A stretch of 63,838 nucleotides of DNA, filler included, from Octopus bimaculoides (lineage: Eukaryota): assembly GCF_001194135.2 (NCBI RefSeq). It is 7 parts of 7 records of this genome, joined end to end, with 100 filler letters (N's around TTAATTAATTAA, not from the genome) between each part and the next. Parts side by side here need not be neighbours in the genome. Positions count along the whole stretch, not along the records: positions 14,343 to 36,595 come from NC_069000.1; 6 more parts are not named here. One strand, 5' to 3'. Shown piece after piece: positions 26,922-28,413 of the stretch (its first letter is position 1; every line of letters begins with the position of its first letter). The notes below the pieces were generated by a model. It made no database searches and was not told where the DNA came from. It was given only the letters and a program-made list of their open reading frames with translations. Both the position numbers and the translations under genes were made by a program.

Positions 26922-28413
26922 TGTAAGGGAAGACCGACGTCGGGGTCACCAATTGTAAGGGTCGACCGTGCGAACTCAAAAAAGGAGATATGGTGACGAA
27001 TGGAAAAACAGGACTCCTTTTATTTAAACATGTCACACGGTCGAACATACAAATTATATATCAAATAATGATATACACGTCGGGGTCACCATTTTGTTAG
27101 GGACGACCGTGCGAACTCATAAAAGGAGTAATGGTGACGAATGGAAAAACAGGGGACTCCTTTTCTTTACACGAGTCACACGGTCGAACATACAAATATA
27201 GATATCAATGAATGATATCTATGATATGTTATACGACGATAACATAGATGACCAGTAATGAAAGACCACAACCGTATTAGATGAATAACAGATATATTTA
27301 TTGTAGTGTTAAAGATGTATGTCTGTGTGAGAGTGTGAATGCGACATATAAGAACATAATCAAAGACAGGCCGTCGTACAAAGAAAAGTGTGTATGTGAG
27401 TGATACATGTGTGTATGTGAAATATTACAGCAGAGAAAGAGTCAATGACACGTGAGCAATTATACCAGATCTTGGGTACACAATAAGAAAAGTTCTGTAT
27501 GTGAAAGTGAGGGAGGCTGAGTTTGGCAGAGCTGATCACTAGTTGTGATGTCGAGGCATCGATGCCGGGCCGTGATTCTTGTTATACAGATGTTCNNNNN
27601 NNNNNNNNNNNNNNNNNNNNNNNNNNNNNNNNNNNNNNNNNNNNNNNNNNNNNNNNNNNNNNNNNNNNNNNNNNNNNNNNNNNNNNNNNNNNNNNNNNNN
27701 NNNNNNNNNNNNNNNNNNNNNNNNNNNNNNNNNNNNNNNNNNNNNNNNNNNNNNNNNNNNNNNNNNNNNNNNNNNNNNNNNNNNNNNNNNNNNNNNNNNN
27801 NNNNNNNNNNNNNNNNNNNNNNNNNNNNNNNNNNNNNNNNNNNNNNNNNNNNNNNNNNNNNNNNNNNNNNNNNNNNNNNNNNNNNNNNNNNNNNNNNNNN
27901 NNNNNNNNNNNNNNNNNNNNNNNNNNNNNNNNNNNNNNNNNNNNNNNNNNNNNNNNNNNNNNNNNNNNNNNNNNNNNNNNNNNNNNNNNNNNNNNNNNNN
28001 NNNNNNNNNNNNNNNNNNNNNNNNNNNNNNNNNNNNNNNNNNNNNNNNNNNNNNNNNNNNNNNNNNNNNNNNNNNNNNNNNNNNNNNNNGTGTGGTACAC
28101 GGAACAGTTCTCAAAGAGAAACTGGACCGAGACAAATTATTGGGTATGAGTTGATCTATATATAGCGTTAAGAGGGCTCCAAATGCCTTTAGAATTTTAC
28201 TCTATCACGTGACCTTATTAGGGGCCGTGATTGGTCAGTTTGCGTTCTGGCGGGAAAGGTTCGAAGAAGTTGCCGATTCGAATAATGATCAGTCACGTGA
28301 TGGACAAGGAATGGGTTCTCTACTACGCTCGCATTTATTTATATTTAAATGAGAAGATTGTATGTAATGGCGATAGTAGTTTGTATCTAATGGCGGGAGG
28401 TAGTTTCACTACA
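26922..28413 (-). mobile_element. Solo LTR, probably Gypsy-type (contains a ~495-N gap)
   Basis: TGTA...TACA termini; 4-bp TSD TAAG at 26918-26921 and 28414-28417; minus-strand AATAAA near 27298 and TATA-like element near 28160 suggest minus orientation. Confidence 0.75.

What the first reader, a model, noticed from the sequence alone, without database searches (positions are those of the whole stretch)
26937..27216. Tandem 140-bp unit in the solo LTR encodes the same three-helix pseudoknot twice
Seen, copy 1: gtcacca (26945) / tggtgac (26991); tcgaccgtg (26962) / cacggtcga (27036); aaaaggag (26980) / ctcctttt (27014). Seen, copy 2: gtcaccat (27085) / atggtgac (27131); cgaccgtgcgaactc (27104) / gagtcacacggtcg (27173); aaaaggagt (27121) / actcctttt (27156). 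The order A-B-C-A'-C'-B' is necessarily pseudoknotted: a long stem whose loop pairs with a flanking tail. Differences between copies fall mostly in linkers. A C-A mismatch on the plus strand becomes a G-U pair on the minus strand, matching the inferred LTR orientation. Inference: a functional RNA module in the R/U5 leader, such as a packaging or dimerisation signal, nuclease-resistant knot or unrecognised ribozyme. It does not fit hammerhead or HDV cores as far as I can see.
Basis: partly seen in the sequence, partly recalled or inferred. Interest (0 to 1): 0.7.

Follow-up and report, generated by a model that had tools for sequence, protein, structure and literature searches.

The report
Duplicated retroelement U5 hairpin plus tRNA-Trp primer site
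The repeated "pseudoknot" is the end of a retrotransposon's terminal repeat together with its binding site for the tRNA-Trp primer, copied twice in a dead, gene-less element: an ordinary kind of feature with one small curiosity, a hairpin loop that mimics the primer's end.

Summary

The interpretation needs re-centring. On the minus strand each unit ends in TGGTGACCCCGACGT(G). These 15-16 nt are exactly complementary to the 3' end (CCA included) of tRNA-Trp and lie 2-3 nt after an LTR-type ...ACA end. That is a primer-binding site (PBS).
- Helices B and C are one long U5 hairpin just upstream of it.
- The hairpin loop carries 7 nt identical to the primer's 3' end.

The locus is not a plain solo LTR. 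It reads LTR (252 nt) - PBS - partial LTR (122 nt) - PBS - LTR tip (15 nt). It has no genes and is bounded by TGT...ACA and a 6-bp duplication.

The hairpin (z -3.3 and -3.7 on the minus strand) and the loop:PBS match (p about 0.005) exceed chance. However, the helices never vary between the two units, no other family copy could be retrieved, and Rfam finds no ribozyme or other family.

Best reading: an ordinary retroelement PBS segment, duplicated, with a possible PBS-masking pseudoknot whose function is unproven.

The parts
26922..27346 (-). Whole gene-less retroelement derivative, 425 bp. On the minus strand it reads TGT...ACA.
   Evidence: TG..CA ends with identical TATAAG on both sides. 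CpG observed/expected is 1.2-1.56 inside, against 0.1-0.3 in the left flank and 0.31 for the piece. The same CGGTC..CCCTTACA end motif occurs three times, the last copy exactly at 26922.
26916..26921 (.). Left copy of the putative 6-bp target-site duplication, TATAAG.
   Evidence: Caveat: three other TG..CA configurations with a flanking repeat of 5 bp or more also enclose the tandem repeat, so the duplication alone is weak evidence.
27347..27352 (.). Right copy of the putative 6-bp target-site duplication, TATAAG.
27095..27346 (-). Full LTR copy, 252 nt, ending ...CCCTAACA. Its last 125 nt or so belong to the upstream tandem unit.
   Evidence: It is followed by a 3-nt spacer and then the PBS. 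Whole-element minus-strand fold has z -5.79. The element strand carries AATAAA at position 45 and a TATA-like motif at 114. U3/R/U5 borders were not determined.
27076..27091 (-). PBS no. 1: 16 contiguous nt complementary to the 3' end of tRNA-Trp(CCA), preceded by spacer AAA (27092-27094).
   Evidence: 16 of 18 match the complement of the published tRNA-Trp-CCA tRF-3 (PMC7555719 and PMC7330628).
26954..27075 (-). Partial LTR copy, about 122 nt, homologous to LTR positions from about 128 to 252 and ending ...CCCTTACA.
   Evidence: Alignment of the two units. End motif.
26937..26951 (-). PBS no. 2: 15 contiguous nt complementary to the tRNA-Trp 3' end, preceded by spacer AT (26952-26953).
   Evidence: 15 of 18, contiguous from nt 1.
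26922..26936 (-). LTR tip: 15 nt that match the last 15 nt of either LTR end at 13 of 15 positions.
   Evidence: ends E1, E2, E3.
27105..27185 (-). U5 hairpin of the upstream unit. Stems: B 27176-27185/27105-27114; middle 27170-27175/27116-27121; C 27156-27163/27122-27129. Loop: 27130-27155.
   Evidence: MFE fold; z -3.73 on the minus strand and -2.01 on the plus strand.
26962..27044 (-). U5 hairpin of the downstream unit. Stems: B 27033-27044/26962-26973; middle 27023-27028/26975-26980; C 27014-27020/26981-26987. Loop: 26988-27013.
   Evidence: MFE fold; z -3.30 on the minus strand and -1.97 on the plus strand.
27130..27138 (-). Loop arm of helix A, upstream unit (GUCACCAUU). It pairs with 27085-27093, which is spacer AA plus PBS nt 1-7.
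   Evidence: 9-bp perfect complement. Duplex -13.1 kcal/mol; 0.4% of shuffles reach it.
26991..26997 (-). Loop arm of helix A, downstream unit (GUCACCA, identical to the last 7 nt of tRNA-Trp). It pairs with 26945-26951, which is PBS nt 1-7.
   Evidence: 7-bp perfect complement. Duplex -11.6 kcal/mol; 0.65% of shuffles reach it.
27198..27222 (-). Small hairpin D at the start of the upstream unit: 10-bp stem, 5-nt loop.
   Evidence: (I9). It holds the only pair that changes on both sides between units (G-C against U-A).
27055..27077 (-). Small hairpin D at the start of the downstream unit: 7-9 bp.

Best explanation
**What it is (shown).** The 141-bp unit is the 3' part of a long terminal repeat (R/U5) plus a short spacer plus the primer-binding site for tRNA-Trp. 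It belongs to an LTR retroelement lying on the minus strand.

The locus reads, 5' to 3' on that strand: target duplication, LTR (252 nt), AAA, PBS (16 nt), partial LTR (about 122 nt), AT, PBS (15 nt), last 15 nt of an LTR, target duplication. It has no internal genes, no polypurine tract and no second full LTR. It is therefore a dead derivative and not a plain solo LTR.

**How the helices map (shown).**
- B, a middle stem and C form one long imperfect hairpin of about 25 bp with a 26-nt loop. Its base lies 9-10 nt before the LTR end.
- Helix A pairs seven loop nucleotides (GUCACCA, the same letters as the primer tRNA's 3' end) with PBS nucleotides 1-7, plus two spacer nucleotides in one unit.

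**How it most likely works (inferred).**
- In the element's RNA this is the PBS segment. A U5 inverted-repeat hairpin sits next to the PBS, as in retroviruses.
- In primer-free RNA its loop can mask the start of the PBS.
- Annealing of tRNA-Trp over 15-18 bp would displace the 7-9-bp helix A. A and primer binding are therefore alternative states.

**Origin of the duplication (inferred).** Both repeat junctions start at the same point, PBS nt 15-16, and re-enter the LTR at two different places (about position 128 and position 238). This fits repeated template switching by reverse transcriptase better than one random genomic duplication.

**My probabilities.**
- Identity as a U5-PBS module on the minus strand: about 0.85-0.9.
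- The nested LTR-PBS layout as described: about 0.75.
- The hairpin is a selected cis element: about 0.45.
- The loop:PBS helix is functional: about 0.25-0.3.
For: **PBS**
- The window's own 15-mer occurs in published tables as the 3' end of mature tRNA-Trp-CCA (the tRF-3 of tRNA-Trp-CCA-4-1).
- The same 15-mer occurs in the template of a human tRNA-Trp and in a PCR primer for chicken endogenous proviruses. Avian leukosis virus uses tRNA-Trp as primer (PMC11181671).
- A script check gives 16/18 and 15/18 matches, contiguous from nt 1, starting 3 and 2 nt after ...ACA. There is no other 10-mer match in the piece.
- My arithmetic: chance of one given 15-mer in 2 x 20 kb is about 4e-5.

**Boundaries**
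- TGT...ACA ends plus a TATAAG duplication.
- A sharp CpG step at 26922.
- A third copy of the LTR end motif exactly at the boundary.

**Hairpin**
- z -3.30 and -3.73 on the minus strand, against -1.97 and -2.01 on the plus strand.
- Control windows never fell below -3.1.
- Summed helix energy was unmatched in 150 shuffles.

**Loop:PBS helix**
- p about 0.005.

**Precedents**
- U5-IR stem-loop at the 5' end of retroviral genomes (PMC3601003).
- A pseudoknot adjacent to the PBS in Ty1 (PMC3592414).
- The tRNA annealing site is base-paired in some HIV-1 leader conformers (PMC11181671).
Against: - No second copy of the family could be obtained, so boundaries, R/U5 borders and any selection on the helices rest on one locus.
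- The host's own tRNA-Trp was not seen. The comparison is with mouse and human sequences printed in papers.
- The target duplication is not unique. Four TG..CA configurations with flanking repeats of 5 bp or more enclose the repeat, and 31 six-bp cases occur piece-wide.
- Helices A, B and C never vary between the two units, so there is no covariation evidence (247 of 500 shuffles do as well).
- With copy-2-defined helices, the depletion of differences in helices largely disappears.
- Geometry (inference from A-form dimensions): a 10-13-nt linker must run from the base of a roughly 25-bp hairpin to its loop. This is borderline unless the hairpin bends at its internal loops, so A, B and C may not all form in one molecule.
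- Competing nested pairings of the PBS are predicted.
- The units differ by 12%, yet all 8 shared CpGs are kept and 12 of 13 substitutions are transversions. Neither a one-off reverse-transcription error nor simple neutral decay explains this.
Confidence: 0.68

Rival explanations
1. The complementarities carry no function. The long hairpin is an old inverted duplication inside U5. The 7-nt loop match to the PBS is chance or a scar of an earlier aberrant reverse-transcription event that copied a primer end. The tandem unit is a dead by-product.
For: Helices are invariant between units, so nothing shows selection. The count-based test shows three inverted repeats are not rare. Differences touch helix ends when helices are defined on copy 2. 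The locus itself is plainly a defective product.
Against: The energy-based and loop:PBS tests give p below 0.01. The minus-strand preference through G.U pairs is what an RNA-level constraint predicts. The 24 shared loop nucleotides and all CpGs are conserved despite 12% divergence.
Confidence: 0.3
2. One reading: an autonomous functional RNA module such as a self-cleaving ribozyme, an exonuclease-resistant knot or a packaging/dimerisation signal, encoded twice.
For: Strong predicted structure and a crossing helix. A loop:PBS complement could also act between two RNA molecules as a dimer contact (inference).
Against: No Rfam family reaches its gathering score in the whole piece. At E up to 10 nothing from the hammerhead, HDV-like, twister, pistol or hatchet families appears. 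No CUGANGA core on either strand. By reading the sequence, the A/B crossing resembles HDV P1/P2, but there is no G.U at the P1 base, no P1.1 partner in L3 and no P4. One arm of the knot is fully explained as the PBS.
Confidence: 0.05
3. Tf1-type self-priming. The loop sequence, not a tRNA, is the primer that anneals to the PBS after cleavage of the element's own RNA.
For: The loop is complementary to PBS nt 1-7(9). Hairpin priming is documented in some chromoviruses (PMC3601003).
Against: The PBS matches tRNA-Trp over 15-16 nt, far beyond the 7 nt shared with the loop. The complement sits in a U5 loop about 45 nt upstream, not at the 5' end of the transcript. A primer made there would copy no R region (inference).
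Confidence: 0.04
4. DNA-level reading: a duplicated enhancer block with palindromic transcription-factor sites, as in U3 tandem repeats of many LTRs.
For: Tandem duplications are common in LTRs (general knowledge). The unit contains CRE-like (GACGTC, TGACG) and GGTCA-like motifs (reading). A promoter-like CpG-rich block lies about 1 kb away.
Against: The PBS places the unit at the U5 end of the LTR, not in U3. Arms 26-65 nt apart are not dimeric binding sites. The strand asymmetry of folding favours RNA.
Confidence: 0.04
5. Miniature-element array. The true LTR is only about 57 nt (TGTTTTTCC...CCCTTACA). It is preceded by a purine tract (AAAGAAAAGGAG, which is arm C) acting as polypurine tract and followed by the PBS, so the 141-bp unit is a whole tiny LTR-PBS-internal-PPT element in tandem.
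For: A 12-nt purine run lies 3-5 nt before a TG on the element strand. Tandem arrays of miniature LTR elements are known (PMC10886601).
Against: A 12-nt purine run is not significant in 425 nt. The duplication, TGT...ACA ends and CpG step bound the 425-bp block, not this unit. The 128-nt 5' part would be unexplained.
Confidence: 0.04

Closest known systems
Retroviral PBS segment with U5-IR stem-loop (avian sarcoma/leukosis viruses, primer tRNA-Trp)
   Same: An inverted repeat in U5 forms a hairpin immediately upstream of an 18-nt-type PBS. The primer is the same (tRNA-Trp): the window's 15-mer is contained in a published primer for chicken endogenous proviruses. A 6-bp target duplication is also typical of that group (own knowledge).
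   Different: The hairpin is much longer (about 25 bp, 26-nt loop). Its loop is complementary to the PBS itself. No leader, gag or pol is present, so no phylogenetic link can be claimed. The host appears to be an invertebrate. No complementarity to the tRNA body was found.
[quoted passage not shown]
   Same: An LTR-retrotransposon RNA in which a pseudoknot next to the PBS is tied to reverse transcription (PMC3592414).
   Different: In Ty1 the knot does not use the PBS as one strand, and it lies in the gag-coding 5' region. It is supported there by probing and compensatory mutants; here there is only prediction.
HIV-1 tRNA-like element and alternative PBS-segment conformers
   Same: Primer mimicry next to the PBS. 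The tRNA annealing site is base-paired in some conformers and freed in others (PMC11181671; PMC5113203).
   Different: HIV-1 mimics the anticodon arm to bind LysRS. Here seven letters of the acceptor end are mimicked and the partner is the PBS itself.
Tf1/chromovirus self-priming hairpin
   Same: A stretch of the element's own RNA is complementary to its PBS within a larger U5 structure (PMC3601003).
   Different: In Tf1 the complement is the first 11 nt of the transcript, and the PBS need not match a tRNA. Here the PBS is tRNA-exact over 15-16 nt, and the complement is in a loop.
Non-autonomous miniature LTR elements (TRIMs; Cassandra, Helenus, Ajax)
   Same: Short gene-less LTR-PBS structures, sometimes in tandem arrays, and LTRs that carry small-RNA-like sequence (PMC10886601).
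   Different: No tRNA-like or 5S-like gene is detected (ARAGORN and Rfam negative). The tRNA-related letters are antisense and are the PBS. There is no polypurine tract or second full LTR.

Membership tests
LTR retroelement (5' LTR plus PBS region) | Repeat ends TG...CA with short inverted termini | tested here: met
   TGT at 27346 and ACA at 26922 on the minus strand.
LTR retroelement (5' LTR plus PBS region) | 4-6-bp target-site duplication | tested here: inconclusive
   TATAAG lies on both sides, but three alternative configurations also enclose the repeat and 31 six-bp cases occur in the piece. The CpG step at 26922 gives support.
LTR retroelement (5' LTR plus PBS region) | PBS complementary to a tRNA 3' end (with CCA) within a few nt of the LTR end | tested here: met
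   16 and 15 contiguous nt against tRNA-Trp, 3 and 2 nt after ...ACA.
LTR retroelement (5' LTR plus PBS region) | Polypurine tract, second full LTR, gag/pol | tested here: not met
   Only partial LTR copies follow the PBS. No ORF of 80 aa or more is nearby. The only purine run is arm C. The locus is a defective derivative.
LTR retroelement (5' LTR plus PBS region) | Multiple dispersed copies of the same repeat in the genome | not testable with these tools
   No copy elsewhere in the 22-kb piece. Public collections reachable here hold no relative.
Solo LTR (product of LTR-LTR recombination) | A single LTR between the target duplications, with no internal sequence | tested here: not met
   Two PBS copies and two extra partial LTR ends lie inside the duplications.
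PBS-adjacent structured RNA (U5-IR type hairpin, PBS-segment pseudoknot) | Inverted repeat in U5 forming a hairpin directly upstream of the PBS | tested here: met
   The hairpin base is 9-10 nt before the LTR end. z -3.3 and -3.7; controls.
PBS-adjacent structured RNA (U5-IR type hairpin, PBS-segment pseudoknot) | Base pairs supported by covariation | tested here: inconclusive
   Only two non-independent units. B 11, C 8 and A 7 pairs never vary; one double change occurs in hairpin D; no statistical power.
PBS-adjacent structured RNA (U5-IR type hairpin, PBS-segment pseudoknot) | Needed for initiation of reverse transcription | not testable with these tools
   This is a functional property. 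No computation here addresses it.
Self-cleaving ribozymes (hammerhead, HDV-like, twister, pistol, hatchet and others in Rfam) | Match to the family covariance model or its catalytic core | tested here: not met
   No hit at gathering score. None of these families appears at E up to 10. No CUGANGA on either strand.
Tf1-type self-priming element | PBS complementary to the 5' end of the element's own transcript instead of a tRNA | tested here: not met
   The PBS is tRNA-Trp-exact for 15-16 nt. The internal complement is 7-9 nt and sits in a U5 loop. The transcript 5' end is unknown.
TRIMs with small-RNA-derived LTRs (Helenus, Ajax, Cassandra) | tRNA-like or 5S-like sequence with pol III boxes in the LTR | tested here: not met
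   ARAGORN finds none. No tRNA or 5S hit at E up to 10.

The most novel reading that the evidence does not exclude
The U5 hairpin loop that copies the last seven letters of the primer tRNA is a conserved PBS lock. It would hold the PBS in a pseudoknot until the primer is placed. Alternatively it is a living intermediate between hairpin (self) priming and tRNA priming, the transition postulated for early LTR elements (PMC3601003). In that case the tandem U5-PBS arrangement would be a family trait rather than a one-off accident.
Probability: 0.1. Interest if true: 0.6.

Novelty: new member of a known kind. Interest (0 to 1): 0.3.

Why it matters
- **It explains the finding.** One strand of the pseudoknot is the tRNA-Trp primer-binding site. 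That fixes the element's strand and identifies the repeat unit as U5 plus PBS.
- **It corrects the label.** The locus is a defective LTR-PBS-LTR-PBS-LTR-tip product, not a solo LTR.
- **It gives a rule for the scan.** Compare any tail helix next to a ...CA repeat end with tRNA 3' ends before calling a new RNA.
- **It leaves one small open question.** If the loop:PBS pairing proves conserved in the family, it would be a simple natural case of PBS masking by primer mimicry in an invertebrate retroelement. That would bear on how tRNA priming relates to hairpin priming. The nested junctions at one PBS position would also be a clean record of repeated template switching.

Tried and rejected
1. **Rfam.** The piece was scanned at gathering thresholds, and 26400-27576 at E up to 10. 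Only noise came back (SNORD115, TCL6_2, MIR398 and similar, E 3-9).
2. **ARAGORN.** No tRNA in the region or in the whole piece.
3. **Search for family copies.**
   - blastn against the piece found only self and tandem matches.
   - Four exact or degenerate DNA patterns were run in metagenome, bacterial/archaeal genome and viral collections: 0 hits.
   - One 23-nt hit lies inside a bacterial pyrH gene with unrelated flanks and is taken as chance.
   - A 47-aa ORF across the unit has no homologue.
   - Four window ORFs are not on record in the assembly index.
4. **HDV-like fold, mapped by hand.** A and B cross like P1 and P2, but there is no G.U at the P1 base, no P1.1 partner, a 3-nt gap after P3 and no P4. 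Rejected.
5. **Hammerhead.** No CUGANGA core.
6. **Extra contacts between U5 and the tRNA-Trp body**, as in Rous sarcoma virus or Ty1. The best duplex is no better than shuffles (fraction 0.8).
7. **U3-enhancer duplication.** Rejected once the PBS placed the unit at the U5 end.
8. **Unit equals a complete minus-strand strong-stop copy (R-U5-PBS).** The only TATA-like motif is 14 nt upstream of the unit start, too close for that start to be the cap site. Left open, not supported.
9. **Miniature-LTR array model.** Kept as a low-probability rival.
10. **Pfam scan of the flanks.** I did not pursue it, because the CpG step and end motif already bound the element.
11. **Host identity.** The SINE copies look cephalopod-like to me from memory. 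A literature search for a SINE string found nothing, so the host is not established.
12. **Difference-in-linkers test.** P = 0.004 with copy-1 helices, but I judge it biased by how the helices were defined.
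Full report
**1. The observation**

TRF reports one 141-bp tandem repeat at 26937-27218 (2.0 copies, 88% matches, score 441). The two copies align at 93% column identity.

An exhaustive list of perfect inverted repeats of 7 nt or more gives the following:
- Copy 1: A (7), B (9), C (8) and a small hairpin D.
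- Copy 2: A (9), B (8) and C (9), plus a 10-bp hairpin D just past the repeat.

The order A-B-C-A'-C'-B' holds, so B and C nest and A crosses them.

**2. Is it more than chance?**

- A plain count is not impressive. Three disjoint inverted repeats totalling at least 24 nt within 110 nt turn up in about 20% of dinucleotide shuffles of the 20-kb piece.
- Stability is more telling. The summed duplex energies (-32.5 and -34.3 kcal/mol) were reached by none of 150 shuffles.
- The nested part, B plus a middle stem plus C, is the minimum-energy fold on both strands but is clearly better on the minus strand.
  - z is -3.30 and -3.73 on the minus strand, against -1.97 and -2.01 on the plus strand.
  - The reason is that C.A mismatches become G.U pairs.
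  - 180 control windows of the same piece had mean z -0.2, sd 1.04 and minimum -3.1.
- Given the hairpin, the loop-to-tail duplex A is matched by only 0.4-0.65% of shuffled loops and tails.

So the arms are a real feature. The "twice" adds little, because the copies are one duplication.

**3. What the tail of helix A is**

On the minus strand each unit ends TGGTGACCCCGACGT(G). Searching the literature for the window's own 15-mer returned tables in which ...ACGTCGGGGTCACCA is the 3' fragment (CCA included) of mature tRNA-Trp-CCA (PMC7555719, PMC7330628, PMC12025293). It also returned the template of a human tRNA-Trp and a PCR primer for chicken endogenous proviruses (PMC5029493). Avian leukosis virus primes with tRNA-Trp (PMC11181671).

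A script check gives 16/18 (27091 to 27074) and 15/18 (26951 to 26934) matches, contiguous from nucleotide 1. There is no other 10-mer match in the piece. These sites begin 3 and 2 nt after ...CCCTAACA and ...CCCTTACA, which is where an LTR element keeps its primer-binding site. ARAGORN and Rfam find no tRNA gene here. The letters are therefore antisense to a tRNA end and are not a tRNA-derived gene.

**4. Anatomy of the locus**

Read on the minus strand:

| Segment | Coordinates |
|---|---|
| TATAAG duplication | 27352 to 27347 |
| LTR, 252 nt | 27346 to 27095 |
| Spacer AAA | 27094 to 27092 |
| PBS, 16 nt | 27091 to 27076 |
| Partial LTR, about 122 nt, re-entering at about LTR position 128 | 27075 to 26954 |
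| Spacer AT | 26953 to 26952 |
| PBS, 15 nt | 26951 to 26937 |
| LTR tip, 15 nt | 26936 to 26922 |
| TATAAG duplication | 26921 to 26916 |

- The three ends (CGGTCGTCCCTAACA, CGGTCGACCCTTACA, CGGTCTTCCCTTACA) are pairwise 13/15 identical.
- The duplication alone is weak evidence. Four configurations enclose the repeat, and 31 six-bp cases occur piece-wide.
- It coincides, however, with TGT...ACA ends, with the third end motif, and with a sharp CpG step. Observed/expected CpG is 1.2-1.56 inside, 0.1-0.3 to the left and 0.31 overall.
- There are no internal genes, no polypurine tract and no second full LTR.
- A solo LTR made by LTR-LTR recombination cannot contain a PBS, so that label is wrong.

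**5. What the helices are**

B, the middle stem and C form one long imperfect hairpin in the last 95 nt or so of the LTR. Its base lies 9-10 nt before the LTR end. Its 26-nt loop ends in GUCACCA, the same seven letters as the 3' end of tRNA-Trp, and so is complementary to PBS nt 1-7. In the upstream unit two spacer nucleotides extend the pairing to 9 bp, directly abutting helix C.

Helix A is thus a U5-loop:PBS pairing. It cannot coexist with the primer annealed to the PBS.

Hairpins from U5 inverted repeats next to the PBS are a known retroviral feature (U5-IR; PMC3601003). A PBS-adjacent pseudoknot is known in Ty1 (PMC3592414). In HIV-1 the tRNA annealing site is paired in some leader conformers, and a nearby element mimics the primer (PMC11181671, PMC5113203).

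**6. Limits on the functional claim**

- RNAalifold and an explicit pair count with the pseudoknot show that B (11 pairs), C (8) and A (7 of 9) never vary between the units. The only double change (G-C against U-A) is in hairpin D. The test has no power.
- The depletion of differences in helices (1 of 12, P = 0.004) holds for helices defined on copy 1. The longer copy-2 helices contain three more differences, so the claim is partly circular.
- No extra complementarity to the tRNA body was found.
- From A-form dimensions (inference), a 10-13-nt linker barely reaches from the hairpin base to its loop. All three helices in one molecule would need a bent hairpin. An intermolecular loop:PBS contact is equally possible.
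- The minimum-energy folds also offer competing nested partners for the PBS.

**7. Origin of the duplication (inference)**

Both internal junctions leave the PBS at nt 15-16 and re-enter the LTR at different points. This is what repeated template switching from one donor site predicts, whereas a single random genomic duplication would have to end exactly at a pre-existing junction.

Against a one-off event:
- The units differ by 12%.
- All eight shared CpGs are kept in a CpG-poor genome.
- 12 of 13 substitutions are transversions.
- The target duplication is still perfect.

Either the family's source element already carried diverged tandem units and this insertion is young, or the locus is old and unmethylated. 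I cannot tell which.

**8. Rivals and what was excluded**

- No ribozyme or other Rfam family is detected. There is no hammerhead core. The HDV-like mapping fails at P1.1, P3/L3, P4 and the G.U base pair.
- Self-priming is unlikely, because the PBS is tRNA-exact well beyond the loop match.
- A U3 enhancer reading is excluded by the PBS position.
- A miniature-LTR array model is kept at low probability.

No other copy of the family could be retrieved from any collection reachable here.

**9. Verdict**

The thing is an ordinary kind of object, the U5-PBS segment of an LTR retroelement, duplicated in a defective copy. It has one mildly unusual trait: a U5 loop that mimics the primer end and can pair with the PBS. 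Interest 0.3.

Noticed in passing
window 28143-28342: A second CpG-rich block (11 CpG in 200 nt, observed/expected 1.24) about 0.8 kb from the element, across an assembly gap. It has two CACGTGA(C/T) E-box/CLEAR-like motifs, an ATTGG (CCAAT) box and GGCGGGAAA (E2F-like), so it looks like a promoter. It might explain why CpGs in the element are not depleted.
   Followed up: partly
window 26937-27218: The two units differ at 13 substituted positions, of which 12 are transversions (8 are A/T swaps). All 8 shared CpGs are intact, in a genome piece with CpG observed/expected 0.31. This is unexplained by simple neutral decay.
   Followed up: partly
window 26934-26943: The junction of PBS no. 2 with the LTR tip creates a perfect 10-nt palindrome, CCGACGTCGG. 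It is absent from the other unit.
   Followed up: no
L001 1589-1611 (metagenome contig SMUY01345748.1): A 23-nt exact match to GTCACACGGTCGAACATACAAAT lies inside a bacterial pyrH gene (tsf-pyrH-frr-uppS neighbourhood). It is also preceded there by GGTGAC. The flanks are unrelated, so it is taken as coincidence.
   Followed up: partly
window 15000-15278 and 17467-17745: A 279-nt direct repeat at 94.6% identity, 2.47 kb apart. There is also a 213-nt inverted similarity (14652-14864 against 17048-17241, 76%). This may be another repeat-bounded element or two copies of one transposon.
   Followed up: no
window 29765-29918 (also 33686-33748): A 65-bp period repeat, 2.3 copies at 71% identity, G+C-rich (about 54%), with a related copy 3.8 kb away. 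It probably belongs to a dispersed repeat.
   Followed up: no
window 21153-21203, 30093-30143, 31617-31667, 32202-32312, 35795-35852, 36428-36478: Many copies of short interspersed repeats (for example TCCAACCCATGCTAGCATGGAAAG..., and TTGTTTCAGTCATTTGACTG...GCCATGCTGGAGCACC), often ending in GAT or TA microsatellites. They look cephalopod-like to me from memory, but a literature string search found nothing, so the host is not established.
   Followed up: partly
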